A DNA stretch of 64,000 nucleotides from IMGVR_UViG_3300042453_005404:186001-250000, one strand, 5' to 3'. Counted from the first letter of the stretch, positions 10,488 through 44,178 are shown. A program made the numbers and translations. The notes: generated from the letters alone by a model not told the origin.

Positions 10488-13112
10488 ATGATAAATTTCT
10501 TAAAAGAAGGCGGAAATGTTTTCAAGGATAAGAAAACAGGTAAAGAACTTACGCAAAGAATTAATCAACAAGATGTGCTACCAACAGTTCAATGGTTAGA
10601 ACAGCAAACAGGTTTAAATCTTGTTGATAACATGCTTGGAACAACGGGCAAGAAAGCCACCAGTGGAGACTTAGATCTTGGTGTTGATGAAAATCAAATC
10701 TCTAAAGATGAACTCGTTACAAAACTTCTTATAATTAAAGGTATTGGTAAAGATGATGTTAAGAAAGGTGGAAATAATGTCCACTTAAAAACACCTATTG
10801 CTGGAGATCCTTCTAATGGATTCGTTCAAACAGACTTTATGTTTGGAGATCCAGAATGGATGAAGTTCTCTATGCAGGGTGGAGGGCACAACTCACCTTA
10901 TCGTGGAACACACAAACATATTCTTCTTGCAAGTATTGCCAAGGCAACAAAATCAAAAGAACATCCAGAAGGTATGAAATGGTCATATCTAAATGGTCTT
11001 ATGGATAGAGCAACAGATAAAACTATTTCAAAAGATCCAGATACTATAGCAGAGATACTTCTTGGTTCCGGTCATTCTGGTCTAGATCTTTCTAACGTTG
11101 AAACAATTGTTAATGCGATTAAGGATCGCCCAGAGTTTGATGAACTTGTTGCGGAAGCAAATGAAACTTTTGCAAAAGATAAGTCACATCCTGTTCCTCC
11201 TGTAACAAGAATGTTGCAAGAAGGTTTGGAAAATCGTATACAGCATCCAGAAGACATGATTTACTGGGAAGGTTCAAGAGGGGCACAGAAGGCTATAAAC
11301 GGCTTATTAGAGCTCGCAGAGAATGCAACCAGTACAACTACTGTTAAATGGGATGGATCGCCTGCAATCGTTTTTGGTATTGATAAAGACGATAAATTTA
11401 TTTTAACTGACAAAGGTGGTTTTACAGTTAAGAGTTACAAGGGCAGAGCAGAATCTCAAGAAGAACTTGAAAGTATGATTAAAGCCCGTGGAGAAAAAGC
11501 GGGTAAAGATTATTCTGAATTTGCTTCTAGTTTGTCTGGTATATTTGAGCCTTTTAAAACAGCTTTAAAACAAATAGACAAAGAATCAGGACAAGGAGTA
11601 TTTTTTAAAGGCGATCTTCTTTACATGAGAAAGCCAACCTTGGTTGATGGTCAATTTGAATTCAAACCAAACGTTGTAACATATAGAGTTCCTGCCGAAT
11701 CAGAATTAGGTAAAAAGATTGCAAATAGTACAATAGGAGTTGTGCTACATGGAATTATAAAGGAAGAAGCAGATGGTAGCACAACAGAAGAATCTTTGGA
11801 AGATATAACAAGTTATTTCCATGGGGATTTATCTTCTGGTGGATTGTCTGCTGGACCTGTATTGATTTTTGCCCCAGTTTTTGTAAACGATGTTCCAAAG
11901 TTCGAATTGGAAATGGTAAAAAAAGCAGAGGATTTGCAAGAAAAGATTGAAAGTTCTTCAGCAAGCATTGATTCTGTTTTGGACGATTCAGAACTAACCG
12001 CAAAAAAAATGAAAGATTTGCCTGATGTCTTATATTCGTATACAAACTCAAAAGCAGATAATTTTTCAACTGTTTCTTCTAACGATTTTAAGTCTTTTAT
12101 AGAAAACAATCAAAAACTTTCCAAGTCAAAAATAACCAGCATTCTTGCTTACATCGAAAGCAAGCAAAATGGTTTCAGAATTCTTTTTCAAATTGTTAAA
12201 GAAATAGAACAACTCAAAAATGAGCTTGTGTCACAGTTTGACAGGCAAAGCACAGCCGTAAAAGCTTTTATCGGATCAACTCCCGGCGGCGAAGGTTATG
12301 TTGTCAAAGGATCATCTGGGCTTATTAAATTGGTTAATCGGGGTGGATTTACTGCCGCTAACCGTGCTTTGATACGTGAAGAAAAAACAGACAGGTTAAA
12401 AGCTATGAAAAAAATTGGATATTATCCCGGTTCATTTAAACCTTTTCATCGTGGACATTATGAAAGTATTTTAGATGCTAAAAACAAGGTTGATGAACTA
12501 AATGTGATTGCATCAGCTAGCGACAGAGTTCGTCCCGGTGAATTTCCTCTAAGTGGTCAAGTTTCAAAAGATTATCTGGAAAAATATATCAAACCAGCAC
12601 TTAAAGAAGAAGGTATAAATCTTATCATTTCTACCGGCTCTCCAGTTACAGATGTTTTTGAATTGATTGAAGAGCAATCTACTCAAGATATTTTTGTTTA
12701 CTTGTTTGCTGGTCCAGATGATTTAGATAGATTTAGGCCAGACTCCATAAAAAGAACTTTCCCAAAACTATCTAAAAAGCAAAGAATAAAGGTTGAACCA
12801 ACCAAAGTTATTATGGGTGGAGATGGAGAAGAGCGTATTTCTGGAACAGCTACAAGACAAGCATTAGAAGACAATGATCTTAGCGGTTTCAAGGCAATGC
12901 TTCCAAACATTCCTTCTGTTCAGAAAGATGCAAAAAAGATTATGAATGCTTTTAAGACAGCAGGCAAAAAAATTGCCGAAGAAGAAGCAGAAAAAGCAGC
13001 AGCAAAAGCAGCAGCAAAAAAAACCAAAAGCAAAACTATAAAAAAAGAATCTGTATTGTTTGAATTTATTGTGTTGCTATTAAAAGAGCAAATAATTTTG
13101 AACAAAAAATGA
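10488..13112 (+). CDS. multidomain nucleotidyltransferase: Pol-beta-like NTase + ligase-like KxDG domain + HIGH-motif adenylyl/cytidylyltransferase
   Basis: LGTTGKKATSGDLDLGVD; TTVKWDGSPAIVFG; YYPGSFKPFHRGH and ISGTATR. Confidence 0.7.
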   Translation: MINFLKEGGNVFKDKKTGKELTQRINQQDVLPTVQWLEQQTGLNLVDNMLGTTGKKATSGDLDLGVDENQISKDELVTKLLIIKGIGKDDVKKGGNNVHLKTPIAGDPSNGFVQTDFMFGDPEWMKFSMQGGGHNSPYRGTHKHILLASIAKATKSKEHPEGMKWSYLNGLMDRATDKTISKDPDTIAEILLGSGHSGLDLSNVETIVNAIKDRPEFDELVAEANETFAKDKSHPVPPVTRMLQEGLENRIQHPEDMIYWEGSRGAQKAINGLLELAENATSTTTVKWDGSPAIVFGIDKDDKFILTDKGGFTVKSYKGRAESQEELESMIKARGEKAGKDYSEFASSLSGIFEPFKTALKQIDKESGQGVFFKGDLLYMRKPTLVDGQFEFKPNVVTYRVPAESELGKKIANSTIGVVLHGIIKEEADGSTTEESLEDITSYFHGDLSSGGLSAGPVLIFAPVFVNDVPKFELEMVKKAEDLQEKIESSSASIDSVLDDSELTAKKMKDLPDVLYSYTNSKADNFSTVSSNDFKSFIENNQKLSKSKITSILAYIESKQNGFRILFQIVKEIEQLKNELVSQFDRQSTAVKAFIGSTPGGEGYVVKGSSGLIKLVNRGGFTAANRALIREEKTDRLKAMKKIGYYPGSFKPFHRGHYESILDAKNKVDELNVIASASDRVRPGEFPLSGQVSKDYLEKYIKPALKEEGINLIISTGSPVTDVFELIEEQSTQDIFVYLFAGPDDLDRFRPDSIKRTFPKLSKKQRIKVEPTKVIMGGDGEERISGTATRQALEDNDLSGFKAMLPNIPSVQKDAKKIMNAFKTAGKKIAEEEAEKAAAKAAAKKTKSKTIKKESVLFEFIVLLLKEQIILNKK

Positions 13113-13170
13113 AAGTTTCTAAATCACGTATTACTTATATGCATGGCTGGATGCCAAAGGAGAATTTAAA

Positions 13171-13374
13171 ATGAAAGTTACTGTAGGACAACTCAAGACA
13201 TTGATTCGGGAAGCAGCAGCAGAAGCTATGGAAGAAATGGGTGATCGCCATGATCCTTCTTTGGAAGAAGACGTTATGGAAGAAGACACACTTCATGAAG
13301 CAGTTACCCGTGCATTCCGTGCTGGTTATCAACGTGGAGTCAAAGCTGCAACAGCCCGTTACCGCCGCCGCTGA
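13171..13374 (+). CDS. small probable internal head protein
   Basis: MKVTVGQLKTLIREAA with further AME, SLE, VME, LHE sites; GGAG RBS; TTACTTAT motif at 13131. Confidence 0.7.
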   Translation: MKVTVGQLKTLIREAAAEAMEEMGDRHDPSLEEDVMEEDTLHEAVTRAFRAGYQRGVKAATARYRRR

Positions 13375-13432: not shown

Positions 13433-14080
13433 TCAGTGTGCTTTAATCAAACGTGAACTGATTTTTAGATGTTTCCCAAATTTTCTGTTCAAATCTGGGT
13501 CAAATTTTAAACTTTTTACAGCCTCAACATTTAGACGACTGTCATCAAAAAACTCAATGTGTGGAATGTTTTCAGACAACATGGCTTGTTTGATCCATTC
13601 ACTTTTTAGTTCTGGTTTTGATCCAGACAAAGTTATAACAGGAATATCAATACCAAGCGATTTAAGAAACGCTTTAATGTTTTCGTTTGCGTCATGGCCT
13701 CTTGCTGTAAGAATAACAGCAGGAAAAGATGATTCTTTTCTTAGCTTGCTCACAACTTTACGTAAGATTTCAAAAGTAAAATCAATGATTTTTGGATCTC
13801 TTACTTCGGCAAACTCTCGATAATCATATTTGTATTCTTTTTCTGGATGTTTTTCAAACACAGCATATTCAGCTGGAGTGATTGCATATTCTTCGCCTAG
13901 TTGTTCTCCAGTTTCTTTATCGTATTCACTTACCCAAACTTTTGAGTTCGTTTTGGCTAGAGTATCGTCAAAGTCAAACACACGTAGCGTTTTTAAACCA
14001 GTACGTCCAGACACAACACCTAAATTTTCTAACTCCTCTAAGATCAATATTTTAATAGCGTTATATACTTCACGTTTCAT
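13433..14080 (-). CDS. HAD-superfamily phosphatase
   Basis: DxDxT motif VFDFDDTLAKT, ILTARG, K, FFDDS. Confidence 0.8.
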   Translation of the reverse strand: MKREVYNAIKILILEELENLGVVSGRTGLKTLRVFDFDDTLAKTNSKVWVSEYDKETGEQLGEEYAITPAEYAVFEKHPEKEYKYDYREFAEVRDPKIIDFTFEILRKVVSKLRKESSFPAVILTARGHDANENIKAFLKSLGIDIPVITLSGSKPELKSEWIKQAMLSENIPHIEFFDDSRLNVEAVKSLKFDPDLNRKFGKHLKISSRLIKAH

Positions 14081-14091: not shown

Positions 14092-14107
14092 TACTTATAC
14101 ATAAGTA
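14092..14107. promoter_or_regulatory. palindromic pair of late-promoter-like motifs between divergent genes
   Basis: TACTTAT-AC-ATAAGTA between the ATG at 14080 (-) and the ATG at 14109 (+). Confidence 0.55.
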
Positions 14108-14108
14108 T

Positions 14109-15416: not shown

Positions 15417-16382
15417 ATGGAATACAAATACGAAGGTCATTCACTTAAATCCGGTATCTACAAAATCACAAACAAACTAAACGGAAGAATCTATATTGGT
15501 TCTGCTAAACGTTTCAAGGAACGGTGGCAATCTCACGTTTACTCTCTGAGAAATCAAAAACACAACAATAGTTTTCTTCAAGCGGATTTTAACAAATGCG
15601 GAGAAGAAGCATTTGTGTTCGAAGTATTGGAAGTTACAGAAGGCAAAACTAAAGAAGAACGTTTGTTGATTGAAGAAGTTTATATCGGGCAATATTACGA
15701 CAAAGGTAACAGCTGCTATAATCTGTGTAGCCGAGCGATATCTAGAGAAAACACAAAAAGCAAAAACCCAGAAGAAACAAAACGCAAGATATCGGCTGCC
15801 ACAAAAAAGATGTGGCAAGACCCAGAAAAAGCGGCTAGTATACGCAGCTCTATGAAAAGTGCGCTATCAGATCCAGAGACAGCCAAGCGTCATCAAGAGG
15901 GTCGCATTCGTTCGTGGGAAAACAATCAAGAACGTCGTGCCGCTGCTTCGCAACGTATGTCAGAACGTATGACAAACAATACGGAAGAAACAGAGAAAGT
16001 TGTAGAGATTCTAAAAGCATCACAACCTAAAGGCAGAGACACTTTTAGGAAACGAATGAAAGAAGATACAGAGCTTCGACAAACTTATGTTGATATTGCA
16101 AAAAAGAAAGCTGAAAATCTAAACGAGAGATACAAGAATGATGCTGAGTATAAAGCGATGATGGATAGAAAATCTATAGAGAACATCAAAGCGTATAACG
16201 AAAAACAAGCACAAAGCATACCAGTCAAAGCTCCTTTGGTATCACCAGATGGAATAGTTTATTCAGATGTTCGCAGTTTGAATGCATTTGCCAAAGAACA
16301 TGGTTTAGATTCAAGTTCTCTTTACAAGCTTTATTCTGGCAAGCTGAACGAAGTAAAAGGTTGGAAGCTATTTATAGAATAG
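15417..16382 (+). mobile_element. free-standing GIY-YIG homing endonuclease
   Basis: SGIYKITNKLNGRIYIGSAKRFKERW, FEVLE, E, YNL; helical linker; C-terminal NUMOD1/HTH-like module. Confidence 0.9.
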
Positions 16383-18366: not shown

Positions 18367-18445
18367 AACGGTGTCCTCGCAGGTAAACAGGTTTTCGGTA
18401 TCTATTTATGCCGTAGAACTTTAACCATAAAGTGAGGACAACATT

Positions 18446-21634: not shown

Positions 21635-21677
21635 ATTCTTCTATTTATCGTTAACGTTTGATATACGGAGATAAAAC

Positions 21678-27969: not shown

Positions 27970-27973
27970 CTAC

Positions 27974-28002
27974 TACTTATGAGCAAAGGTGTAAACGCAT
28001 GA
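27974..28002 (+). repeat. 29-bp 5' leader repeated at 37627-37655 (one mismatch)
   Basis: TACTTATGAGCAAAGGTGTAA(A/G)CGCATGA, each copy ending at a start codon. Confidence 0.9.
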
Positions 28003-28307
28003 ACAACAAAACACGCAAGCAACTAAAAGCAGCAATCAAAGAAGCTCTAGATGTTGATTCAATTCTTCTCTCTGGTGGAGAAGGTGGTTTGTCAGAGTAC
28101 AACAAAAAGGTAGAAAAGTTTCTTAATGAAACTTTTGCTTCTGCCGATGAACTGGCAGAAGAAGGTGAAACACTTCTTCGTGAAAACTATTTTCACAACA
28201 CAGCGGCAACAGAACGTCGCAGAGTTATTCTAAGTCTTGTGGGTTATTTGAGAGAAACACGCAACGGAATCGGAAACATTCTACGTTTGCGTTACTTGAT
28301 CGGTTAG
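27999..28307 (+). CDS. hypothetical protein, probable internal head protein
   Basis: RKQLKAAIKEALD N-terminus; FLNE and LLRE sites. Confidence 0.7.
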   Translation: MNNKTRKQLKAAIKEALDVDSILLSGGEGGLSEYNKKVEKFLNETFASADELAEEGETLLRENYFHNTAATERRRVILSLVGYLRETRNGIGNILRLRYLIG

Positions 28308-28824: not shown

Positions 28825-30135
28825 TTGGTTATGGACAACGATGATTTAGATTTTCTTCTTGAAGGCGAAAACGCCCCAACCAACCCAGAACTTTGGTCAA
28901 GAGCCAAATCTCTTGCTCGCAGCAAGTTTGATAAGTACCCGTGTGTGAGCATGGATTCTTTAGCATTATCTAAAGAAGGCTGGAAATCATACGGCGAATT
29001 AAAGCTGGGAGATATGATCTGTACGTACAACATATCAACTGGTTTTTTGGAATGGAAGCCGATTGTCAATCTTCATTATTTTGAAGATGCTCCAACAGTT
29101 AGAGTTTGTACTCCGCAAACGAATTTTAATTTTGTTTGCACACCAAACCATAAATGGATTTTAAAAAAGAATTGGAAAGAAGGAAAACGGTCAAGAAAAG
29201 CTTATTGGAAGCAAGATTGCTTAATCGAAACAAAAGATATCAATCAACATATGGAGATTGTAACCAGCGCAAGGTTAAATCCATTGTTAAACCAAACCAA
29301 TCTGGAACTTATTTCGTTTTCAAAAAATGAAAACTCTTGGGTTGAAAGAGTAATCAATATGTCTTCTGCACAAAGAGAAGCATTTTTTGCTGCGGCTATT
29401 GTGTATGATGGTTGCGAAAAGAAACTAAAAGGAAAGCACAAAAACCGAGAAATGCGTTTTGGTTTTTCACAAAAAAACAAAGATCATGGCGAAGCTTTGG
29501 AAATATGTGCGGTTTTACTAGGCTACAGAGTTTCATATAGAGTAAAATCACACAATAAAACGATGACAGATTGGACACTATCAAACAGAAACATTCAATC
29601 AACACAAAACCTAGATGTATTCGTTGAATCCAATCAATCTGTATGGTGTCCAGAAACAGAAAATCATACATGGGTTATGAAGCAAAATGGAATGGTTACA
29701 ATAACAGGTAACTCGGCCTACGCTAATGGCTGGGCTGCTAAGTGGTATAAAAAACATGGCGGCGGGTGGAGAAAGAAAAAGAAAAAAACCAACGAAGCAA
29801 CAGAAATCCTTGAAGCTCTTAAAGAAATCATCATGGAAGATTTGAATCAGTGGTTTTCTAAGGAAAGAAAAGGAAACTGGGTACGTCTTGATACTTCTGG
29901 AAACATTGCTGGAGAATGCGGCACAAGTAAAAACAAAAAGAATCCAGATCGTTGCCTTCCAGCCGCAAAAGCTCGTAGTTTAACACGGGCAGAGCGTGCT
30001 GCTACAGCGAGAAAAAAGAAGAGTAAATCTCATGGTGGACGCAAGCAATTTGTACCAAACACCAAAAAAGCCAAGGTTAAGACAGAAGAAGAAAGCTATT
30101 TAGAAGAAGATACTGATGACACCCTTTATGAATGA
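28825..30135 (+). CDS. basic hypothetical protein interrupted by an intein
   Basis: Exteins join as NPELWSRAKSLARSKFDKYP|SAYANGWAAKWYKKHGGGW; second domain LNQWF...ECG...RCLPAAKA. Confidence 0.8.
   Translation: MVMDNDDLDFLLEGENAPTNPELWSRAKSLARSKFDKYPCVSMDSLALSKEGWKSYGELKLGDMICTYNISTGFLEWKPIVNLHYFEDAPTVRVCTPQTNFNFVCTPNHKWILKKNWKEGKRSRKAYWKQDCLIETKDINQHMEIVTSARLNPLLNQTNLELISFSKNENSWVERVINMSSAQREAFFAAAIVYDGCEKKLKGKHKNREMRFGFSQKNKDHGEALEICAVLLGYRVSYRVKSHNKTMTDWTLSNRNIQSTQNLDVFVESNQSVWCPETENHTWVMKQNGMVTITGNSAYANGWAAKWYKKHGGGWRKKKKKTNEATEILEALKEIIMEDLNQWFSKERKGNWVRLDTSGNIAGECGTSKNKKNPDRCLPAAKARSLTRAERAATARKKKSKSHGGRKQFVPNTKKAKVKTEEESYLEEDTDDTLYE
28942..29712 (+). mobile_element. intein (257 aa) with a degenerate LAGLIDADG-like region
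   Basis: Block A CVSMDSLALSKEGWK, block B FVCTPNHKW, block F VWCPETENHTWV, end TGN followed by Ser+1; AFFAAAIVYDG. Confidence 0.88.
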
Positions 30136-34159: not shown

Positions 34160-35131
34160 CTAGATATCTAGGTTTTTTAGATCAGCTTCGTACATCATCA
34201 CGGCCAAGTCTTTGAAATTGACTTTTGGTTGCCATCCAAAAGCTTTTCTGGCTTTGTATGCGTTACCGAGAAGCAAAGGAACTTCATGCGGCCTAAACAG
34301 TCTTGAATCGATTTCTAGATGCTTGGAAACGTTTAAACCAGCGTGTTCGAACACAACTTCCAAAAACTCTTTAACGGTATGTGTTTCACCTGTGGCAACA
34401 ACAAAATCATCTGGTGTTTTATGTTGCAGCATCATCCACATAGCTGCAACATAATCTCCAGCAAAACCCCAATCACGTTTAGCATCAAGGTTTCCTAGTT
34501 TGATTTTATCTTGTTTACCTAGTTTAATGTTTGCCGCAGCAAGAGTTATTTTACGAGTGACAAACGTTTCACCACGAAGAGGTGATTCATGGTTGAACAA
34601 AATACCGCAAGAGATTGGTAGTTGATAAGCTTCACGATAGTTTCTGCAAAGAGTATGAGCATACAGTTTTGCGCAAGCATATGGTGAAGCTGGCGTCATG
34701 CGGGTGTGTTCGTTTTGTGGAACTTCTACGTTGTCTCCGTACATTTCTGATGATGAAGCTTGATAGAATCTAGCTGTTGGACAAATATGCCTATAAGCTT
34801 CAAGCAGCTTAAGAGTGCCACTGCCAACAACATCTAATGTTTCTTCTGGGACTTCAAAAGAAACACGAACATGACTTTGTGCTGCAAGATTATAGATTTC
34901 GTTGGGCTGATGTGTTGCAAGCAGTCTATACAAAGAACTGCTATCCATCATGTTTCCATAAACAAGCTTAAAGTTGGGATGTTTGAAAATATCTTCACCG
35001 TCAATACGCAAAGTATTGATTAGTGATGTGCGACGTTTCATTCCGATAACAGAGTAACCTTTAGCTAAAAGGAGCCTTGCTAGATATGCACCGTCTTGAC
35101 CGGTGATTCCTGTAATGAATGCTTTTTTCAT
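34160..35131 (-). CDS. gmd: GDP-mannose 4,6-dehydratase
   Basis: AFITGITGQDGAYL, YNLAAQSHVRVSFE, YQASSSEMYG, SPYACAK, GILFNHESPLRG, RDWGFAGDYV. Confidence 0.96.
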   Translation of the reverse strand: MKKAFITGITGQDGAYLARLLLAKGYSVIGMKRRTSLINTLRIDGEDIFKHPNFKLVYGNMMDSSSLYRLLATHQPNEIYNLAAQSHVRVSFEVPEETLDVVGSGTLKLLEAYRHICPTARFYQASSSEMYGDNVEVPQNEHTRMTPASPYACAKLYAHTLCRNYREAYQLPISCGILFNHESPLRGETFVTRKITLAAANIKLGKQDKIKLGNLDAKRDWGFAGDYVAAMWMMLQHKTPDDFVVATGETHTVKEFLEVVFEHAGLNVSKHLEIDSRLFRPHEVPLLLGNAYKARKAFGWQPKVNFKDLAVMMYEADLKNLDI

Positions 35132-35391
35132 GTAAACTCGATTGTGTTGGGATCAGTAGCTTCGATGATAACTTGATGCTTAACAATATCAAATCTTAGA
35201 GTTAAAGGAACGTGCCAAGCAGGATGCGTTTCCCTTCGTTTGGCTTCATTAACAGCATTATCAAATGCGATCTTAATGAAGTGTTGAGTAAATGGTGTTA
35301 ATGGTTGATGCAAAAACTTTTCATTTAGAATATTGTGATAGTGATCGATGATTTTATACCAATAGTTTCGTTGCACTTCAACCTTGCTCAT
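35128..35391 (-). CDS. hypothetical protein
   Basis: ORF track; 4-nt overlaps on both sides. Confidence 0.65.
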   Translation of the reverse strand: MSKVEVQRNYWYKIIDHYHNILNEKFLHQPLTPFTQHFIKIAFDNAVNEAKRRETHPAWHVPLTLRFDIVKHQVIIEATDPNTIEFT

Positions 35392-36494
35392 AGAATAATC
35401 ATATCCTCTCTTTCTGGAGAAGTAGAAATATGAGAAACTTTCACCTTGAGATTTTTTGCAATCATGTCAATATAGTTCAAAGCATTTTCTGGCAGTTTGC
35501 TTTTATCACGCATATGTTTTGTTGCAGCTTTCCATCCAGCGGCTTTATAAAGTACGGAAGGCGCAACGTAAGCTGGGATTACGTCAAAGCTATCCAGTAC
35601 ATCTAGCTTGGTGACAACCACTTCATCAACACCGTTAATGTTACATGCATAGCGTAGATCAACAAGATCAATCCAACCACAACGACGTTTCCTTCCTGTG
35701 GTTGTTCCATATTCTTCACCAATCTCCCTAAGTCTATCTCCAAGCTCGTTAGTTTGTTCAGTTGGAAATGGTCCCGCACCAACTCTTGTTGTGTACGCTT
35801 TTGCTACGCCAATAACCTTACGAATAGCTTTGTGTGTTAATCCTGTTCCTGTAAGAGCTCCACCAATAGTACAGTTGGAGCTTGTTACGTAAGGATATGT
35901 TCCGTGGTCAATATCCAACATTGTGCCTTGTGCGCCCTCCAGAAGAATATTAGCACCGCTTGCATGAGCATTACGCAGCAATGCGTGTGTGTCACAAACA
36001 AATGGCCTAATAAGGCTTGTAATGTCTTTGCTAAATACATCATCAAGACTACCTTTTTCTAGATCTTCCATACGCATACCTGTACGGTGCATTTTAGATG
36101 CGTAGGTTGGACCGATACCCCTTCCAGTAGTTCCCACAATGTATCCTGTTGCACGATCTTCTGCAACAGTTGTAGGAGTGATAACATGAGCAGCATGAGA
36201 AATAAACAAACGACCTTTTAGTGATGTTGGTCCACCATGTTCTTCGATTTCTTTTGCAATTTGCAATGGATCAATAACACAACCATTTGCAATAACGTTG
36301 TTAACGTGTGGATGAAGAACACCAGAAGGAAGAGCATGAACAGCAGTACGATGACCATTCACAACAAGTGTATGTCCAGCATTGTTTCCTCCATGAAAAC
36401 GTACAACATAATCATAGTGATTGGCAAGATAATCAACAACTTTACCTTTACCTTCATCCCCGTAGGATAGCCCAAGGACCACATCAGCAGGCAT
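35388..36494 (-). CDS. purA: adenylosuccinate synthetase (compact, 368 aa)
   Basis: YGDEGKGK, GGNNAGHT, GTTGRGIGPTY, LEGAQG, GTYPYVTSS, YTTRVGAGPFPTE, GTTTGRKRRCGW. Confidence 0.95.
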   Translation of the reverse strand: MPADVVLGLSYGDEGKGKVVDYLANHYDYVVRFHGGNNAGHTLVVNGHRTAVHALPSGVLHPHVNNVIANGCVIDPLQIAKEIEEHGGPTSLKGRLFISHAAHVITPTTVAEDRATGYIVGTTGRGIGPTYASKMHRTGMRMEDLEKGSLDDVFSKDITSLIRPFVCDTHALLRNAHASGANILLEGAQGTMLDIDHGTYPYVTSSNCTIGGALTGTGLTHKAIRKVIGVAKAYTTRVGAGPFPTEQTNELGDRLREIGEEYGTTTGRKRRCGWIDLVDLRYACNINGVDEVVVTKLDVLDSFDVIPAYVAPSVLYKAAGWKAATKHMRDKSKLPENALNYIDMIAKNLKVKVSHISTSPEREDMIIL

Positions 36495-36614
36495 ATAACG
36501 TTCCTTTTTTAACCTTTCTATATTATCTTAACAATCGATAACCAAAACATAAAAGGATTATAGGTTAGTGGAACACAACCAAGAGAAGGGAGGGGAGGGA
36601 TGTATTTACTGATT

Positions 36615-37391
36615 ATGATCAAATTGTTAAATATATTGTTTGAGGTTGACAGTTGGGATGATTATGATATCGATATCAGAACGGGTAAGCTTATTCCAAA
36701 AGCTTCTGCTCCAGTAAAACCGAAACAAGAACCAGACGAACCCGAAGGTGGTGTGCTTGGCAAATATGTTTTTGGAGATATTAGAAAAAATCTTGGGCAA
36801 AACATTGAGCAAGAAGCCGACACTCAGTTAGAAAAAGATATCTATAACGCACTTGTTTTCTATACATCGTTCAACACCAAAACGAACTTAAATCGAGTTG
36901 CCTTGAAAATGAAAGAGATAAGCGATTCTGGAAAGTATCGTGAGTATTTTTCTGTTCCTTCTGCAACGGCGTGGCGGGTTTTGATTGACATATCGAAGTC
37001 AAATCTTGAGAATATTCTTGGTAAGGAAACTAACAAAGATCTTGGTGTAGAAAGCAGTGGGATTATAGCTCCAAGAAGCGATTCAAGTTTCACTGGTTGG
37101 ACACTTGATCCTAAAGCTACGATTAAAATTTATAGTCAAGCAAGATTCGAATCTGTTTCCAAAGAAAGTTCTGATGGTTATATAGTTCTCGCAAAGTGCG
37201 AGACAACCTCGAACGATTTCTTTTTCAACGTTGACGCTGCGATGAAATATATTTCTGTAGGTGGTTCACCTTATGATTATCAAAAAGAAGTGTTAGCTTA
37301 TGGGACTGTTAATGCATCCGGCGTTGCTTACATGAAAAAGAAAGATATAAAACACAATCCAGTTCAAGAGCTACTAAAGCTACTTATGTGA
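36615..37391 (+). CDS. putative ADP-ribosyltransferase-fold protein
   Basis: Ordered AWR, FTGWTLDP and YQKEVL segments resembling the R-S-E ART motifs; N-terminal LLNILFE tag. Confidence 0.5.
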   Translation: MIKLLNILFEVDSWDDYDIDIRTGKLIPKASAPVKPKQEPDEPEGGVLGKYVFGDIRKNLGQNIEQEADTQLEKDIYNALVFYTSFNTKTNLNRVALKMKEISDSGKYREYFSVPSATAWRVLIDISKSNLENILGKETNKDLGVESSGIIAPRSDSSFTGWTLDPKATIKIYSQARFESVSKESSDGYIVLAKCETTSNDFFFNVDAAMKYISVGGSPYDYQKEVLAYGTVNASGVAYMKKKDIKHNPVQELLKLLM

Positions 37392-37392
37392 C

Positions 37393-37569
37393 ATGACCAA
37401 ACTATATAATATACTTTTCGAAACAGGTCCATCTGCTCAAAGTGCTATTCCAACTCTGGGAGATGATCCAAGAAGAGTTTCTAGAACAGGCGTTGCTGCA
37501 CAAGATGCTGGGTTTTTAGACATAGTTGACACAATGGGCTTGGACATGGACAGTCCAGAAGATGATTAG
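37393..37569 (+). CDS. small acidic protein (58 aa, MTKLYNILFETGPSAQS...)
   Basis: Manual translation; CTACTTAT motif 5 nt upstream; same ILFE tag as the preceding gene. Confidence 0.6.
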   Translation: MTKLYNILFETGPSAQSAIPTLGDDPRRVSRTGVAAQDAGFLDIVDTMGLDMDSPEDD

Positions 37570-37651
37570 GATTTTACGTTTCCAGAAGAAGATCAAATGA
37601 GAACCAAGATAACCCGGTAAGTTCTATACTTATGAGCAAAGGTGTAAGCGC

Positions 37652-38497
37652 ATGACCACAAAAATGTTAGACAAAGAACGTTTGCAAAAAGTTATTCAAG
37701 AAGCTGTTGGTAATGTACTCAGCAATAGCGGAGTCTTGGAAAAACCTGTTATAAAGCAGGTTGTTGATGCTGGTAAAAAGCTTTTGAAAGAAGCTGTGAT
37801 TATCATGCCACGATCTTTTGTGATGAAAGGTGAAGTTCAATCACCAACCACAAAAGAAAATCATGAAAAGCTTTACAAGAGTTATGTTGACAGTTTCAAC
37901 AAGATATCCAGCAAGCTTGACACTGTACCAAAAACAGACGCTGACAACAATAACGACTCAGAGTTTCGCAGATTAAAGCAAGATGAAGTTCACAACATGA
38001 ATGGTGTAAAGCTTCATGAGTTATACTTCACAAACTCTGGAGACGTGAATAGCGAGATACGTGCTGACTCTGTACCCTTTATGCGTCTTGGCCGTGATTG
38101 GGGTACATTCGATCAATGGCAGCTAGATTTCAGAGCTTGCGGTATGTCTGCAAGAGAAGGTTGGGTTATTTGTTACTTTGATCCATTCAAGCAACAATAT
38201 TTTAACTGCTTTATTGAAGGTCACACAATCAATCTTCCTTTGATGTGTATTCCAGTGCTTGTGATAGACACATGGCATCATGCATGGTTTTATGATTATC
38301 CCGGCGAAAAGATGGATTATCTCAACAAGTCAATGCGTGAGATTAATTGGAACGTTGTGGAGATGAGAATGCTTGCAGCAGAAATGGCAAAATTGAATCA
38401 GTTGTATGCAATTCAACCGGTTATTTCTAATGAGAAAGAACGTGGAGTAACTCTTCCAGAAGTAATGCCACCTGTAGAAGTTCTAGGGAGCCGCTAA
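37652..38497 (+). CDS. Fe/Mn superoxide-dismutase-like protein with an N-terminal extension
   Basis: ENHEKLY, KLHELYF, WGTFDQW, EGWV, PVLVIDTWHHAWFYDY (canonical DxWEHAYY), INWNVV. Confidence 0.8.
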   Translation: MTTKMLDKERLQKVIQEAVGNVLSNSGVLEKPVIKQVVDAGKKLLKEAVIIMPRSFVMKGEVQSPTTKENHEKLYKSYVDSFNKISSKLDTVPKTDADNNNDSEFRRLKQDEVHNMNGVKLHELYFTNSGDVNSEIRADSVPFMRLGRDWGTFDQWQLDFRACGMSAREGWVICYFDPFKQQYFNCFIEGHTINLPLMCIPVLVIDTWHHAWFYDYPGEKMDYLNKSMREINWNVVEMRMLAAEMAKLNQLYAIQPVISNEKERGVTLPEVMPPVEVLGSR

Positions 38498-39216
38498 TGC
38501 TATATCATAAACGTCAAAGGCTTAATGAGTTTCGTATTCTTCGTGAGCAAGAGGAAGAAAGCAAGGGACCACCATACATTCCCCCAGAGGAACGTATGCT
38601 GGGATTAACAGATGCTTCAGATTCCATGATAGAAAAAAATGCATCAGTCGATCAAAAGATTGATAGCTATCTCATGCAATATGAAAAAGAAGCTGTGCCT
38701 TTAGACCAAGACGACAAAGACAAAATCAGCCCAGAAGTAAGACAGCGAGCAGCAGAACAACCTGTTCCTTTGTCTGAACGCAAAGATCGTTGGTTTTATA
38801 AATATTTGTTTGAACAAGAGGCTCCCCCGGCTGCTCCATCAGACACAGGTGGAGCCGATGAGGATACGACGGGTGCAAGTGAGGGAGGGGATACACCAGA
38901 ACCGGGAGCAGAAGCACCTGTGGCACCCGTACCGAATATTCGACTTAACAAGTTTGCTCAAGGCGTTGCACGCTTGGCAAACAACTATCAAACATTGATT
39001 GATCCAAAATCAATCATTTTAAACCGTGCAATGTATTATATAGCTAAGAACTATTCCCCACGGCTAGCAAAAGAGTTTATGAGTATTCTTGAACGTGAAT
39101 TTAATCTCACACCAAAAACACAGTCTCAAAGAGACATGCAATATCCTCCAGCTCCAAGACAAGCAAATGCAGGTCCAGATAGTGGTGGCGGAGTGCCATC
39201 TGGGGGAGGTGATTGA
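38497..39216 (+). CDS. hypothetical protein with LNE/LRE/LFE sites
   Basis: ORF track; TAATG overlap. Confidence 0.7.
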   Translation: MLYHKRQRLNEFRILREQEEESKGPPYIPPEERMLGLTDASDSMIEKNASVDQKIDSYLMQYEKEAVPLDQDDKDKISPEVRQRAAEQPVPLSERKDRWFYKYLFEQEAPPAAPSDTGGADEDTTGASEGGDTPEPGAEAPVAPVPNIRLNKFAQGVARLANNYQTLIDPKSIILNRAMYYIAKNYSPRLAKEFMSILEREFNLTPKTQSQRDMQYPPAPRQANAGPDSGGGVPSGGGD

Positions 39217-42270: not shown

Positions 42271-42300
42271 AGCCTCCTGCTAGTTATCTAGCAGGAGGTT
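42271..42300 (+). promoter_or_regulatory. hairpin sequestering the endolysin RBS, with the late motif across the loop
   Basis: CCTCCTGCTAG-TTAT-CTAGCAGGAGG (11-bp perfect stem); CTAGTTAT at 42280; ATG at 42306. Confidence 0.8.
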
Positions 42301-42305
42301 TTCTT

Positions 42306-43121
42306 ATGTCTATAATCCTAAATGAAGTTAAACTTGAAATACCAAATGTTAAAACAACAAGTTGGTTAGATGAAGAAGCAGCAGCTAAAAAGATCAAGCA
42401 AGTAACTGATAAAACAGTAAGATCGACGTGGATACGCTCGATTGTGTGTCACACTGTACATGGCAAGCTTGGCAGTCTTTTGCCGGGAGTAGGTCCAGAA
42501 GGTGATGCGGCAGAAAGATATGCACAATATCAAACCAACACAAAACGTAGCGTTAGCTGGGATTTTACTTGTGATTTGGATGGAAGTTGGATAATCCAAA
42601 ACGATCCATTGAAATTTTATACATGGCAAGCATCAAGTGTTAACGGTTACACATGCGGTTTTGAATTAGTTCAGTTAAACAATGGAGATTTATACGAGGG
42701 ACAGATAGCCAAGGCTGTCGAGTTTATTGATTTTCTAACAGCCAAACTTGGCATACAACGTCAAATCCCATGGGATATGAAAAACAACTGTCCTCCAAAG
42801 GGTATCGTTAGTCGTATTGCTGGATCTAATAATGGCAGAGACGTTATTGGTGTTTATTGTCACTATCATCAAACTACAAATCGTGGGCAAGGTGATCCCG
42901 GTCCATATCTTCAACAAGCTTTAAAGGCCGCTGGATATGAGACTTATGCATTTGATGGAGATGACGATAAAGCGGTCTGGAAGGTCCGTCAGAAGGCTTT
43001 AGGTTTTGCTGATAAAGATTGTGATGGAGTTCCCGGTCCTGCCACTGTAAGGGCTTTAAAAGCGTCTGGCAAGGCACATGGTATTTGGGTTAAACGTCCT
43101 ATCGATGATTTAATCAAGTGA
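42306..43121 (+). CDS. endolysin, N-acetylmuramoyl-L-alanine amidase with a C-terminal peptidoglycan-binding motif
   Basis: SIVCHTVHG, SVSWDFTCDLDG, NGYTCGFELV, YCHYH...GDPG, DGVPGPATVRAL. Confidence 0.82.
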   Translation: MSIILNEVKLEIPNVKTTSWLDEEAAAKKIKQVTDKTVRSTWIRSIVCHTVHGKLGSLLPGVGPEGDAAERYAQYQTNTKRSVSWDFTCDLDGSWIIQNDPLKFYTWQASSVNGYTCGFELVQLNNGDLYEGQIAKAVEFIDFLTAKLGIQRQIPWDMKNNCPPKGIVSRIAGSNNGRDVIGVYCHYHQTTNRGQGDPGPYLQQALKAAGYETYAFDGDDDKAVWKVRQKALGFADKDCDGVPGPATVRALKASGKAHGIWVKRPIDDLIK

Positions 43122-44178
43122 TTGGTTCGTAGCCACCTTGAGCGAGCCAACCAAGATCAAGGTTATCTGGAGTATATACTTCGGTACCATCTTCCAAAGG
43201 TTCATCTGATGGTACCATGCTAACGATTGTTACGTCGTTTGAGTTTGTAGGTTCAGCGTTTTCTTTTTGAAGATACGCTCGTCTTGCTGGGGAAGCTTCC
43301 ATATATGCATCACTTAGTCTTCTAGCTCCAGCCGGAGTATCCAAAGTGTACGGCGAATAATCTTTTGGTATTGGAGTGGTTACGATTAATCTTCCTTGAC
43401 AGCGTATACGAAGATAAAGATAAGTTCCGCTTCCTCCGGGTGTTGATCTCATCTCAATGATGAACTTGTTTTTCGAAGCAAGGCTAGACAACCTTGGAAC
43501 TCCTATTGCAGCTAAGTTAGCTGGGTCATGGCCAAGAATATACAACCCACGGTGATCGTTTTCTTTACCACCTATTTGTGCATAATACGTAGCTTTTTGA
43601 CTATAAAGAGTTGTCATGAACTTTGAGTGAGCTTGCACGTTATAGTTAAACAACAAACCATTTGCTTGTGCAGCAGCCCATGCAAGACGAGTGCATTGTA
43701 ATCCTTCACCAGCAAGGTTGTAAGCTTCACCTTCTTTGGTTTCTAAAAACGTTTTTCCGTTAATTTCATGTCGCCCAGCTTTAAAGTTTTTTAAAAACCT
43801 ACGCAATCTTTTAAGGGCACCACCAGTGCCCAAAGCTTGTTCAAGTACTTCTTTCATTTCATCATGCACTTTAATCATGGCTTGACTTGTTCCCAAATCA
43901 GAAAGAAAACGTATATCTCTTGGATTGCTTATATCCCAACTGCTGCCACCAAGTTGAGCTTTAAAATCTTTTTTGATTTCGAGTTTAAATGGGCCGACTG
44001 TATTGCCTTTGTTATCTTGTAGTGTAAAGGTTGCGTCCTCACTATAACGGTTTGAGCCAGCTCCTGTAGCCGTTCGCAATGTCATACCGGCTGCAAAAAG
44101 AGAATTGTTAACCAGTGCTTCATATCCAAAACCTTCTGTTTCAAATTCTTCAAAAAGTAGCTCTTCTAGAAATATCAT
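43114..44178 (-). CDS. putative PD-(D/E)XK nuclease
   Basis: GYEALV...SEDATF...KLEIKKDFKAQLG; N-terminal IFLEELLFE tag. Confidence 0.55.
   Translation of the reverse strand: MIFLEELLFEEFETEGFGYEALVNNSLFAAGMTLRTATGAGSNRYSEDATFTLQDNKGNTVGPFKLEIKKDFKAQLGGSSWDISNPRDIRFLSDLGTSQAMIKVHDEMKEVLEQALGTGGALKRLRRFLKNFKAGRHEINGKTFLETKEGEAYNLAGEGLQCTRLAWAAAQANGLLFNYNVQAHSKFMTTLYSQKATYYAQIGGKENDHRGLYILGHDPANLAAIGVPRLSSLASKNKFIIEMRSTPGGSGTYLYLRIRCQGRLIVTTPIPKDYSPYTLDTPAGARRLSDAYMEASPARRAYLQKENAEPTNSNDVTIVSMVPSDEPLEDGTEVYTPDNLDLGWLAQGGYEPIT

What the first reader, a model, noticed from the sequence alone, without database searches (positions are those of the whole stretch)
10488..44178. Enzymes carrying prohead-protease-type hydrophobic-x-E tags: a putative head-packaged, injected enzyme cargo
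Seen: the scaffold and capsid are full of LxE/MxE/IxE sites. The same short N-terminal leaders precede unrelated domains: MINFLKE|GG (triple NTase), KILILEE (HAD), MIKLLNILFE|V (ART-like), MTKLYNILFE|T, RLQKVIQE|AV and LLKE|AV (SOD-like), MIFLEELLFE|E (nuclease-like), DFLLE|GE (intein host), QLKTLIRE|A and QLKAAIKE|A. Most follow the late motif. Established: T4 gp21 cleaves after Glu in such contexts and processes packaged proteins such as Alt and the internal proteins. Inference: this phage addresses a toolkit (NAD/nucleotide chemistry, ADP-ribosylation, superoxide removal, phosphatase, nuclease) to the head for delivery at infection.
Basis: inference. Interest (0 to 1): 0.72.

Follow-up and report, generated by a model that had tools for sequence, protein, structure and literature searches.

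The report
Capsid-targeting leader tags on phage enzymes
A 260-kb freshwater T4-like phage puts one of two short, conserved N-terminal tags ending in Leu/Ile-x-Glu on about 50 unrelated proteins, including several enzymes, and these tags most likely load the proteins into the phage head for injection, as the T4 capsid-targeting sequence does.

Summary
The quoted strings are all present.

Inside it are two very specific leaders. Class A is MKLYxILFE and class B is M[KR]ITVxQLKxLI[KR]E|A. They head about 50 of about 336 genes in this 260-kb uncultivated T4-like phage, in at least 36 unrelated sequence families. Eight are in the window.

- They sit at the exact N-terminus and are conserved at peptide level, not DNA level.
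- They recur, several per contig, in related IMG/VR contigs.
- Class B is the N-terminus of the conserved prohead-core protein encoded next to the gp21-type protease.
- Cargo includes an ART-like family, a SOD-like protein, NUDIX, a DEDD exonuclease and a zeta-like kinase.

Best reading (about 0.7): these are T4-type capsid-targeting propeptides, cut after Glu by the prohead protease.

- The ART-like, SOD-like and two small-protein examples are well supported.
- The HAD-like, NTase and "nuclease-like" proteins are plausible.
- The intein host is unsupported.

Nothing shows packaging directly. I rate this a new variant of a known kind.

The parts
3255..3866 (+). gp21-type prohead protease (Peptidase_S77). 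Its own N-terminus is MNDKKFLLKE|F.
   Evidence: PHROG 207 E=7.5e-49. Pfam PF03420 E=3.8e-28. 32% identical to T4 gp21, with the ELxH and G[VI]SSRxLGS blocks aligned. T4 gp21 starts MNEPQLLIE|.
2386..3258 (+). Site-rich 290-aa protein between portal and protease, probably a prohead core or scaffold component.
   Evidence: 16 [LIVMF]xE sites, 5.5 per 100 aa against a proteome mean of 2.09. CTACTTAT lies 61 nt upstream. No family match.
4466..4990 (+). Prohead-core protein carrying the archetypal class-B leader, MKIQKTEFKTIVKE|CLKE|LVAE|G.
   Evidence: Its orthologues lie 14-1000 nt downstream of the protease gene in relatives whose protease is 49-91% identical. They start MK[LI]T[RK]xxLKx[LIV][IV]KEC[LI]VE.
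5732..7990 (+). Scaffold-like Pro/Ala-rich and acidic protein, N-terminus MSTPLYQEALIE|A.
   Evidence: 3.72 sites per 100 aa. It sits between the core genes and the capsid gene, as T4 gp22 does. T4 gp22 starts MLKEQLIAE|A. No family match.
8053..10005 (+). gp23-type major capsid protein. The predicted propeptide is residues 1-66, ending ...SSMLNE|N.
   Evidence: Pfam Gp23 E=8.6e-77. The N-terminus aligns to T4 gp23 residues 2-133. There are 4 sites in residues 1-70 and 5 in residues 71-650. T4 gp23 has ...SFLTE|A.
10488..13112 (+). Multi-domain nucleotidyltransferase-like protein (DUF6267 plus a cytidylyltransferase-like domain) with the 7-residue start MINFLKE|GG. Possible cargo, outside both leader classes.
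   Evidence: Pfam DUF6267 E=5.7e-38 and CTP_transf_like E=4.8e-4. PHROG cytidyltransferase E=8.3e-10. Homologues that carry the N-terminal domain keep a hydrophobic residue (mostly L or I)-x-E|[GS]G behind N-terminal extensions of 3-36 residues. TATTTA lies 25 nt upstream.
13171..13374 (+). 67-aa protein with a class-B leader, MKVTVGQLKTLIRE|AA.
   Evidence: PSSM score 15.1. TTACTTAT at 13131-13138. Orthologues with the same leader lie about 8 kb downstream of the protease in relatives.
13433..14080 (-). HAD-like phosphatase (FDFDDTL motif) with a weaker class-B-like leader, MKREVYNAIKILILE|E.
   Evidence: Pfam HAD is only marginal, E=6.5e-3. PHROG polynucleotide-kinase family E=4.7e-4. PSSM B score 8.4. 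ATACTTAT at 14101-14108 on the minus strand.
27999..28307 (+). 102-aa protein with a class-B leader, MNNKTRKQLKAAIKE|AL.
   Evidence: PSSM score 13.3. CTACTTAT at 27973-27980. Its 5' leader DNA is nearly identical to that of gene 37652.
28831..30135 (+). Basic protein interrupted by an intein (from about Cys38 to ...TITGN|S). Its start MDNDDLDFLLE|GE is in neither leader class.
   Evidence: Sequence read. No class A or B score and no late motif. No Pfam hit.
36600..37391 (+). ADP-ribosyltransferase-like protein with a class-A leader. The true start is probably 36615 (MIKLLNILFE|V).
   Evidence: PSSM A score 15.3. Ten orthologues keep the leader, with P3 Leu and P1 Glu invariant and a variable linker after it. 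R126, W167 and E230 are invariant. Foldseek's top hits are ADP-ribosyltransferase folds, though weak, E=3e-3 to 0.2. Paralogues elsewhere in the genome also carry class-A leaders.
37393..37569 (+). 58-aa protein with a class-A leader, MTKLYNILFE|T.
   Evidence: PSSM A score 17.9. CTACTTAT at 37380-37387.
37652..38497 (+). Fe/Mn-superoxide-dismutase-like protein with an extra N-terminal region of about 45-65 residues. It carries a class-B-like leader (..RLQKVIQE|AV) and a second site (KKLLKE|AV).
   Evidence: Pfam Sod_Fe_C E=3.4e-15. PDB 1coj E=9.4e-23, aligning residues 68-243 of the phage protein to 25-200 of the chain; the first metal-ligand His appears to be replaced. PSSM B score 9.4. ATACTTAT at 37626-37633.
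43114..44178 (-). 354-aa protein of unknown fold with a class-A-like leader, MIFLEELLFE|E.
   Evidence: The leader MI[LFY][LI][EQ]x[ILV]L[FY]E is kept in the 16 full-length homologues at 58-90% identity; the most distant one (56%) has a different N-terminus. It links to 6 class-A proteins in the motif-free clustering. D48, E67 and K69 are invariant. The model had pLDDT 52 and gave no fold match.
18402..18409 (+). Example of the promoter-like motif CTATTTAT, here upstream of a tail-sheath gene. It also occurs at 21641, 16368, 48927 and 55015.
   Evidence: In the genome there are 79 occurrences, and 37 lie 8-80 nt upstream of a same-strand start. In the window, 17 of 19 plus-strand matches precede plus-strand starts, although the total count equals chance.

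Best explanation
The window is part of a 260-kb uncultivated freshwater myovirus whose head module is of the T4 type (gp20 portal, gp21 protease, scaffold, gp23 capsid protein).

About 50 of its roughly 336 genes, eight of them in the window, begin with one of two conserved leaders ending in Leu/Ile-x-Glu.
- Class A: MKLYxILFE, 9-15 residues.
- Class B: M[KR]ITVxQLKxLI[KR]E|A, 12-19 residues.

Proposed mechanism, with its status:
1. The leader gives the protein affinity for the assembling scaffold core, so the protein is built into the prohead. This is inferred by analogy with the T4 CTS, and from class B being the N-terminus of the conserved core protein next to the protease.
2. The gp21-type protease cuts after the Glu, freeing the cargo, and the leader leaves the head. 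This is inferred.
3. The mature proteins stay with the DNA and enter the host at infection. This is inferred.

What is shown:
- The leaders are real.
- They are N-terminal and conserved at peptide level.
- Unrelated proteins share them.
- They are conserved across a phage lineage.

Cargo with a recognisable fold:
- an ART-like family of four
- a SOD-like protein
- a NUDIX hydrolase
- a DEDD exonuclease
- a zeta-toxin-like P-loop kinase
- an LRV/HEAT-repeat protein
- a HAD-like phosphatase
For: 1. T4-type head machinery is present.

2. The leaders are highly specific to N-termini.
- The top 20 class-A PSSM hits and the top 10 class-B hits all lie at residue 1.
- Regex enrichment has p = 1e-7 to 1e-13.
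- The motif-free test gave 180 pairs against 14-21 in controls, and components of 48 and 17 proteins against 4 or fewer.

3. The 46 leader proteins first listed fall into 36 BLAST families.

4. Selection acts on the peptide. All six Leu codons are used at Leu3.

5. In orthologues the leader is an island of conservation followed by a variable linker with indels.

6. Both leaders recur, several per contig, on different proteins in IMG/VR contigs. The reversed-pattern control scored 0 in the four contigs that carry several copies.

7. Class B equals the N-terminus of the core protein encoded just downstream of the protease, in relatives down to 49% protease identity.

8. There are T4 parallels, read from the T4 genome and from papers.
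- CTS MKTYQEFIAE and Alt MELITE|LFDE.
- gp21 ..LLIE|, gp22 ..LIAE|A and gp23 ..LTE|A.

9. Mature cargo regions are depleted of [LI]xE: observed/expected 0.81 against 1.20 for other proteins, p=0.007. The mature capsid protein shows the same depletion.

10. Leader genes are enriched behind the promoter-like motif that precedes the sheath genes: 12 of 37 motif genes against 34 of 298 others, odds ratio 3.7, p=0.0015.

11. Cytidylyltransferases and kinases have been detected in virion proteomes of T4-like cyanophages (PMC10665884).
Against: - There is no proteomic, structural or expression evidence for this phage, which is known only from metagenomes.
- The cargo is not basic (median pI about 6.3), unlike the T4 internal proteins.
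- Only about a quarter of the leader genes have the promoter-like motif directly upstream.
- That motif has not been shown to be late, and its count in the window equals chance.
- Most leader genes lie in islands far from the structural genes.
- The NTase has 22 internal candidate sites.
- A complete but distant relative (protease 42% identical) has no expanded leader family.
- The leader resembles the T4 CTS only in pattern, not as a homologue.
Confidence: 0.7

Rival explanations
1. The leaders mark substrates of the prohead protease that act only inside the prohead, as extra core or scaffold components or assembly factors. They would be degraded or expelled during maturation, so nothing is delivered to the host.
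For: Class B is shared with a core protein that carries three consecutive sites. Several leader proteins are small, acidic and without a recognisable fold. In T4, gp67, gp68 and gp22 are cut into fragments.
Against: Many cargo proteins are folded enzymes with no obvious assembly role (NUDIX, SOD-like, exonuclease, kinase, ART-like). Their mature parts are depleted of sites rather than enriched, which is the pattern of the retained capsid protein and not of the scaffold.
Confidence: 0.12
2. The leaders do something unrelated to the capsid. They could be an N-terminal regulatory, localisation or degradation peptide, a translation-initiation element, or a recombination handle for gene shuffling.
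For: Nothing ties class A directly to the head. Most class-A genes sit in islands away from the structural genes. Conserved 5' ends could promote cassette exchange.
Against: Conservation is at peptide level, not nucleotide level. The invariant positions are exactly P3 Leu/Ile and P1 Glu of the gp21-type site. The leader is too short and too charged to be a signal peptide. Class B is the N-terminus of a head-module protein. The closest precedents for this pattern that I know of are the T4 CTS and the Alt propeptide.
Confidence: 0.1
3. For the three examples outside the two classes (MINFLKE|GG in the NTase, DFLLE|GE in the intein host, and partly KILILEE in the HAD-like protein), the hydrophobic-x-E is coincidence or part of the folded domain, and these proteins are ordinary cytoplasmic enzymes.
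For: The base rate of the motif is 31-44% per 20 residues. EGGN[IV]FKD is a conserved domain motif in 1207 homologues. The intein host has no class score and no promoter motif. A cyanophage DUF6267 protein starts directly with the domain.
Against: In NTase homologues P3 is hydrophobic, mostly Leu or Ile, while P2 and the extension length vary. One homologue has ..RNILFE|GGN, and DUF6267-only homologues start with class-B-like M..IKSLIE|SC. The HAD-like protein scores 8.4 with the class-B PSSM and has the promoter motif. T4 Alt loses only six residues.
Confidence: 0.45
4. The shared N-termini are an artefact of recent gene duplication or of wrong start-codon calls.
For: Some leader genes are paralogues: five families holding 15 genes. 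My gene calls are home-made, and some starts are ambiguous (36600 versus 36615).
Against: There are 36 unrelated families. A true paralogue family in the same genome (MQLGKMYLVKE...) is homologous along its full length, unlike the leader sets. In relatives the leaders begin within a few codons of the preceding stop. Independent gene calls in public databases give the same N-termini.
Confidence: 0.02

Closest known systems
[quoted passage not shown]
   Same: - The head module is the same type (gp20, gp21, gp22-like, gp23).
- The propeptide is a short N-terminal stretch at residue 1 ending in Leu/Ile-x-Glu.
- Unrelated proteins share it.
- The pattern resembles MKTYQEFIAE and MELITELFDE.
- One cargo family is ART-like, as Alt is.
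- The cargo genes sit in variable clusters.
   Different: - The leader sequences are not homologous to the T4 CTS.
- There are two distinct leader classes.
- About 50 genes carry one (15% of the genome), against a handful in T4.
- The cargo is mostly neutral or acidic and includes several enzyme folds, rather than small basic DNA-binding proteins.
- Nothing has been tested experimentally.
Ejection and inner-body proteins of giant phiKZ-like phages (phiKZ, 201phi2-1, SPN3US), processed by a gp21-related protease
   Same: - Dozens of proteins are packaged in the head.
- A diverged T4-gp21-type protease cuts after Glu at a short motif.
- The phages are jumbo-sized.
   Different: - Their motif is Ser/Ala/Gly-x-Glu.
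- Their propeptides are mostly long, not 10-20 residues.
- They have no common short leader.
- Their lineage is unrelated (virion RNA polymerases; the portal is also processed).
- Here the head genes are plainly T4-like by Pfam.
Phage P1 Dar anti-restriction proteins (DarA, DarB, Hdf and others) packaged into the head
   Same: Defence-countering proteins are loaded into the capsid during assembly and injected with the DNA (papers listed).
   Different: P1 loading depends on an ordered protein-protein hierarchy, not on a common cleavable N-terminal tag. The head module is different. I did not test this comparison here.
Virion-associated enzymes of T4-like cyanophages (for example S-CREM2 cytidylyltransferase, kinase and SAM hydrolase)
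   Same: These are aquatic T4-like phages in which a cytidylyltransferase (NMNAT-like) and kinases were detected in purified virions (PMC10665884). The window's NTase has a cytidylyltransferase-like domain.
   Different: No targeting signal has been described for them. I did not establish homology to the specific S-CREM2 protein. The cyanophage DUF6267 protein I examined lacks a leader.

Membership tests
T4-type CTS / gp21-substrate propeptide system | The phage encodes a gp21-family (Peptidase S77) prohead protease within a gp20/gp22/gp23-type head module. | tested here: met
   Pfam finds Portal_T4, Peptidase_S77 and Gp23. The protease is 32% identical to T4 gp21.
T4-type CTS / gp21-substrate propeptide system | The tag is at the extreme N-terminus and about 10-20 residues long. 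| tested here: met
   P1 Glu lies at residues 9-19 in class A and class B. All top PSSM hits are N-terminal.
T4-type CTS / gp21-substrate propeptide system | The tag ends in the protease's cleavage motif, Leu/Ile at P3 and Glu at P1. | tested here: met
   Class A ends ..[IL]-L-[FY]-E and class B ends ..[LI]-I-[KR]-E. P3 Leu and P1 Glu are invariant in the orthologue alignments.
T4-type CTS / gp21-substrate propeptide system | The same tag is shared by otherwise unrelated proteins. | tested here: met
   There are 36 BLAST families among 46 leader proteins. The motif-free test agrees.
T4-type CTS / gp21-substrate propeptide system | The tag has sequence homology to the T4 CTS itself (MKTYQEFIAE). 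| tested here: inconclusive
   The resemblance is only in pattern (MK-x-Y..hydrophobic..E). Peptides this short cannot show homology.
T4-type CTS / gp21-substrate propeptide system | The tag is sufficient for incorporation into the prohead, and the protease removes it. | not testable with these tools
   The one complex prediction (protease plus the 58-aa class-A protein) gave no answer.
T4-type CTS / gp21-substrate propeptide system | The cargo is present in mature virions and is ejected into the host. | not testable with these tools
   The phage is known only from metagenomes, and no proteome is available.
ADP-ribosyltransferase (R-S-E type, Alt-like) for gene 36600-37391 | An ART fold with catalytic Arg, a Ser/Thr-x-Ser/Thr motif and a [QE]-x-E motif. 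| tested here: inconclusive
   The model has pLDDT 73.8. Nearly all of the top 46 Foldseek hits are ART folds, but weakly (E=3e-3 to 0.2, TM 0.24-0.44). R126, W167 (within [ST]-x-W-[ST]) and E230 are invariant. No Pfam or PHROG match.
Fe/Mn superoxide dismutase for gene 37652-38497 | Both SOD domains and the four metal ligands (His, His, Asp, His). | tested here: inconclusive
   Sod_Fe_C passes the Pfam cutoff but Sod_Fe_N falls below it. PDB 1coj matches at E=9.4e-23. The Asp, the last His and the second His align, but the first His aligns to Leu.
PD-(D/E)xK nuclease for gene 43114-44178 | The restriction-endonuclease-like fold with a D...(D/E)-x-K motif. | tested here: inconclusive
   Invariant D48, E67 and K69 fit the motif. 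The model is poor (pLDDT 52) and no fold or family match was found.

The most novel reading that the evidence does not exclude
The two leader classes are two separate addresses in a modular loading system. Class B copies the N-terminus of a prohead-core protein, and class A would be a second docking peptide. Together they would let this phage lineage pre-load about 15% of its proteome into the capsid as a ready-made takeover and anti-defence kit that acts before any phage gene is expressed. The kit would include ADP-ribosyltransferases, a NUDIX hydrolase, a nucleotide kinase, an exonuclease, a SOD-like protein and NAD/nucleotide enzymes. The system would evolve by simply fusing a 9-14-residue tag to new genes.
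Probability: 0.3. Interest if true: 0.85.

Novelty: new variant of a known kind. Interest (0 to 1): 0.7.

Why it matters
If the leaders work like the T4 CTS, this lineage shows how far the principle can be taken.
- A short fusable tag would turn any protein into injected cargo. Here that would apply to about 50 proteins, several with enzyme folds that fit counter-defence or host takeover (NAD and nucleotide chemistry, ADP-ribosylation, nucleic-acid processing).
- It would give a sequence-only way to predict packaged and ejected proteomes of uncultivated T4-like phages. Such predictions could nominate candidate anti-defence proteins.
- It would offer two new, compact targeting tags for protein delivery by phage capsids.
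- The link between class B and the core protein next to the protease suggests how such tags arise: by copying the N-terminus of a scaffold-core component.

Tried and rejected
- **Complex prediction.** Protease plus the 58-aa class-A protein returned "no answer" (score 0.00). It is no evidence either way.
- **Fold of the "nuclease-like" protein.** The model for 43114-44178 had pLDDT 52 and gave only noise in Foldseek.
- **Cultured relatives.**
  - Megablast of the head region against GenBank phages found nothing.
  - tblastn of the ART-like protein found nothing.
  - The closest cultured phages are only 33-49% identical in capsid protein or protease: Microcystis phage Mel-JY01, Flavobacterium phage immuto and RM378.
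- **Literature.** No paper holds the leader strings or Mel-JY01. No paper describes an expanded CTS repertoire in a T4-like jumbo phage.
- **A third leader class, rejected.** The MQLGKMYLVKE... N-termini belong to a family of 10 or more full-length paralogues.
- **A universal trait of distant T4-like phages, rejected.** A complete 190-kb relative with a 42% identical protease has no expanded leader family.
- **The promoter motif as an over-represented word, rejected.** Its count in the window equals the shuffle expectation. Only its position upstream of starts is non-random.
- **Gene calls.** They are my own (codon log-odds plus a Shine-Dalgarno score).

Full report
**What the window is.**
- The 64-kb window is bases 186001-250000 of a single 260,466-bp contig with 40% GC.
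- Near-identical sequence recurs in lake, aquaculture and wastewater metagenomes, and no cultured close relative exists.
- The head module is of the T4 type:
  - portal, 295-2319, Pfam Portal_T4, E=5e-66
  - prohead protease, 3255-3866, Peptidase_S77, E=4e-28, 32% identical to T4 gp21
  - a Pro/Ala-rich acidic scaffold-like protein, 5732-7990
  - a gp23-type major capsid protein, 8053-10005, E=9e-77
- Downstream lie a head-tail adaptor, two tail-sheath paralogues and a tail tube.
- No gene caller is installed, so I made my own calls (codon log-odds plus Shine-Dalgarno scoring), giving 335 genes. One region needed correcting by hand: the HAD-like gene is 13433-14080 on the minus strand, and the adaptor gene starts near 14109.

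**Checking the observation.**
- All ten quoted peptides are present.
- The motif as defined, a hydrophobic residue, any residue, then Glu near the N-terminus, does not discriminate. It occurs in the first 20 residues of 44% of all genes and in 31-35% of any later 20-residue window.
- The excess is concentrated at P1 positions 9-11 and 14, which pointed to specific leaders.
- Site density partly supports the statement about head proteins:
  - proteome mean 2.09 per 100 aa
  - scaffold-like protein 3.72
  - the protein between portal and protease (2386-3258) 5.52
  - protease 4.43
  - capsid protein, 4 sites in residues 1-70 but only 5 in residues 71-650
- The last site before the conserved core of the capsid protein is ..SSMLNE66|N. 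This matches in position T4 gp23 ..SFLTE65|A.

**Two specific leader classes, genome-wide.** Listing all N-termini showed two recurrent leaders.
- Class A, consensus MKLYxILFE, has variants such as MKLSEILFE, MKLYPIIYLNE and MIFLEELLFE.
- Class B, consensus M[KR]ITVxQLKxLI[KR]E|A, has looser variants ending ..L[IV]LE|A.
- Curated lists hold 29 class-A and 17 class-B genes. A motif-free clustering adds three class-A genes, and a six-frame rescan adds the HAD-like gene to class B. That makes about 50 of roughly 336 genes.
- Window members of class A are 36600/36615-37391, 37393-37569 and 43114-44178(-).
- Window members of class B are 4466-4990, 13171-13374, 13433-14080(-), 27999-28307 and 37652-38497.
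- The largest island, 16 consecutive leader genes, lies outside the window at genome 133.9-147 kb.

**Is it more than chance or paralogy?**
- The top 20 class-A PSSM hits and the top 10 class-B hits in the whole proteome all sit at the exact N-terminus.
- Simple regexes are 9- to 43-fold enriched in the first 20 residues, binomial p = 1e-7 to 1e-13.
- In a test with no motif assumption I took protein pairs with no BLAST similarity beyond residue 20.
  - 180 pairs share at least 6 identities in residues 2-16, against 14 and 21 pairs in two control windows.
  - 22 pairs share at least 8, against none in the controls.
  - Linked components hold 48 and 17 proteins, against at most 4. The 48-protein component holds both leader classes. 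The 17-protein component is the paralogue family described below.
- After removing the first 20 residues, the 46 proteins form 36 BLAST families.
- A genuine paralogue family in the same genome (MQLGKMYLVKE..., 10 or more genes) is homologous over its full length, which makes a useful contrast.
- Conservation is at peptide level. Leu3 of class A uses all six Leu codons, and the other positions vary synonymously.

**Conservation in other phages.**
- Back-translated class-A and class-B patterns found 16 and 19 IMG/VR loci. About one chance match was expected for class A.
- The leader typically begins within a few codons of the preceding stop, on different downstream proteins, often several per contig.
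- Whole-record pattern scans gave 7, 4 and 4 class-A starts in three related fragments, with zero hits for the reversed control. One of these fragments carries a protease 85% identical to the window's.
- Ten orthologues of the ART-like protein keep the leader, with P3 Leu and P1 Glu invariant. Directly after the Glu, conservation falls to 0.3-0.4 and indels appear.
- Sixteen of the 17 full-length homologues of 43114-44178 keep MI[LFY][LI][EQ]x[ILV]L[FY]E.
- A complete but distant relative (protease 42% identical) shows no expanded family, so the expansion is lineage-specific.

**The link to head assembly.**
- I fetched 79 loci around relatives of the protease.
- In relatives whose protease is only 49-55% identical, a gene of about 140 codons lies 14-1000 nt downstream of the protease. 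It starts MK[LI]T[RK]xxLKx[LIV][IV]KEC[LI]VE[IV]L[AS]EG.
- This is the orthologue of window gene 4466-4990 (MKIQKTEFKTIVKE|CLKE|LVAE|G), and its first 14 residues are the class-B consensus.
- Class-B cargo therefore carries a copy of the N-terminus of a conserved prohead-core protein. This is the strongest argument that the leader is a head-assembly signal.
- The protease's own start (MNDKKFLLKE|F) and the scaffold's start (MSTPLYQEALIE|A) parallel T4 gp21 (MNEPQLLIE|T) and gp22 (MLKEQLIAE|A).

**Comparison with what is established for T4.**
- T4 internal proteins carry 10-19-residue N-terminal capsid-targeting sequences. The first ten residues of IPIII (MKTYQEFIAE) suffice for loading. Residues 4 and 7 matter for targeting, and residues 8 and 10 for processing.
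- Foreign proteins fused to this sequence are packaged and injected (PMC9026906, PMC8442874, PMC3012670).
- Alt, the packaged ADP-ribosyltransferase, is cut at ITE-6 and LTE-619 (PMC5694885). Its N-terminus, read from the T4 genome, is MELITE|LFDE|.
- Class A shares with these the MK start, an aromatic residue at position 4, a hydrophobic run and the terminal Leu/Ile-x-Glu. Homology cannot be shown for peptides this short.

**Two indirect predictions that I tested.**
- Proteins that must survive inside a protease-filled prohead should avoid internal sites. Mature parts of leader proteins have an [LI]xE observed/expected ratio of 0.81, against 1.20 for all other proteins (Mann-Whitney p=0.007). 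The broader [LIVMF]xE motif gives 0.90 against 1.17 (p=0.002).
- Cargo should be made together with the structural proteins.
  - The most enriched upstream words form the motif nTAyTTAy.
  - 37 of its 79 genomic copies lie 8-80 nt upstream of a same-strand start, including both sheath genes.
  - 12 of those 37 genes are leader genes, against 34 of the other 298 (odds ratio 3.7, p=0.0015). The HAD-like gene adds one more.
  - Caveats: the motif's count in the window equals the shuffle expectation, its timing is unknown, and three quarters of the leader genes lack it directly upstream.

**What the cargo is.**

Supported by family or structure searches:
- An Fe/Mn-SOD-like protein, 37652-38497. 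Sod_Fe_C gives E=3e-15 and PDB 1coj gives E=9e-23. It has about 45-65 extra N-terminal residues, and the first metal-ligand His appears to be replaced.
- A NUDIX hydrolase whose domain starts right after the nine-residue leader.
- A zeta-toxin-like P-loop kinase, a DEDD (RNase T) exonuclease and an LRV/HEAT-repeat protein.

Partly supported:
- The ART-like family of four, including 36600-37391. Nearly all of the top 46 Foldseek hits of a pLDDT-74 model are ADP-ribosyltransferase folds, but at weak scores. An Arg, a Trp within [ST]-x-W-[ST], and the Glu of [QE]-x-E are invariant.
- The HAD-like phosphatase, on the FDFDDTL motif and marginal matches.
- The NTase 10488-13112, with DUF6267 and a cytidylyltransferase-like domain.

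Unresolved:
- The "nuclease-like" 43114-44178. D48, E67 and K69 are invariant but no fold was obtained.

The mature cargo is not basic, with a median pI near 6.3, unlike the T4 internal proteins.

**The three examples outside the classes.**
- *NTase.* MINFLKE|GG scores in neither class. Among 1207 homologues, those with the N-terminal domain all have a hydrophobic residue (mostly L or I)-x-E|[GS]GN[IV]FKD, while the preceding extension varies from 3 to 36 residues. One homologue reads ..RNILFE|GGN, and DUF6267-only homologues start with class-B-like M..IKSLIE|SC. T4 Alt loses only six residues, and cytidylyltransferases are reported in cyanophage virion proteomes. Packaging is therefore plausible but unproven. 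The conserved EGGN could equally be part of the fold.
- *HAD-like protein.* It is a weak class-B member with the upstream motif, and is plausible cargo.
- *Intein-containing protein 28831-30135.* It has neither a class score nor the motif. Its DFLLE|GE resembles the ..LLE|G sites in the capsid propeptides but is within the base rate.

**Verdict.**
- The leaders are certain as sequence features. Their function as T4-type capsid-targeting, protease-removed propeptides is the best explanation (about 0.7), but it rests on comparative evidence only.
- Relative to the known T4 system this is a new variant. It has two leader classes, one derived from a core protein, about 50 tagged genes, and enzyme-rich, non-basic cargo, in an uncultivated freshwater jumbo-phage lineage.
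- I found no description of it in the searchable literature.

Noticed in passing
Genome 133.9-147 kb (L008:7905-19261 and L009:1265-3061), outside the window: An island of 16 consecutive leader-bearing genes on both strands. It includes the NUDIX hydrolase, the zeta-toxin-like kinase, the DEDD exonuclease and the LRV/HEAT-repeat protein. It is the main concentration of putative cargo.
   Followed up: partly
window 18446-21562 and 21678-24710: Two adjacent tail-sheath paralogues of about 1000 aa each (PHROG 23). Each has its own CTATTTAT motif upstream.
   Followed up: partly
window 27973-27998 and 37626-37651: The roughly 26 nt upstream of the class-B gene 27999 and of the SOD-like gene 37652 are nearly identical (..ACTTATGAGCAAAGGTGTAA[AG]CGC-ATG). 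This is a shared promoter and ribosome-binding cassette in front of two unrelated leader genes.
   Followed up: no
window 28831-30135; 49790-52420; 15417-16382; 3981-4316; 27649-27969: Mobile elements are dense here.
- An intein sits in the basic protein 28831-30135.
- A LAGLIDADG insertion, probably an intein, sits in a PIN-PhoH protein.
- A GIY-YIG homing endonuclease lies between the structural genes.
- There are two HNH endonucleases, one of them between the protease and the core genes.
   Followed up: partly
window 38497-39216: The gene after the SOD-like gene has an internal class-A-like site (..RWFYKYLFE106|QEAPP, PSSM score 9.5) instead of an N-terminal one. It could be an internal processing site, or it could be chance.
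   Followed up: no
window 62926-63798 (+), overlapping an equally long ORF on the minus strand: An alternative start at 62944 gives MLPASLQPVWTALYDFLFE|K, a 19-residue class-A-like leader (PSSM score 10.9). Which strand codes is unresolved, and there is no family match.
   Followed up: no
Genome 49.5-52 kb, 110-122 kb and 130.9 kb, outside the window: A multigene family of 10 or more proteins of about 100 aa, starting MQLGKMYLVKELFWFLYPTKE. They are homologous over their full length. Function is unknown.
   Followed up: partly
window 26802-27659; 34160-35131(-); 35388-36494(-): Auxiliary metabolic genes: a histone-deacetylase-family protein, GDP-mannose 4,6-dehydratase and adenylosuccinate synthetase. 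None has a leader, and for the dehydratase the Pfam domain starts at residue 5.
   Followed up: yes
window 8053-10005: The major capsid protein is 650 aa against 521 in T4. About 230 residues (roughly 130-360) do not align to gp23, so it probably carries an insertion domain.
   Followed up: no
T4 genome, L031:4118-4927 compared with the IPIII CTS: The T4 CTS (..QEFIAE|A) resembles the N-terminus of the T4 scaffold protein gp22 (MLKEQLIAE|A). This parallels the finding here that class B copies a core protein's N-terminus. The window's scaffold start (..LYQEALIE|A) also resembles the T4 CTS (..TYQEFIAE|A).
   Followed up: no
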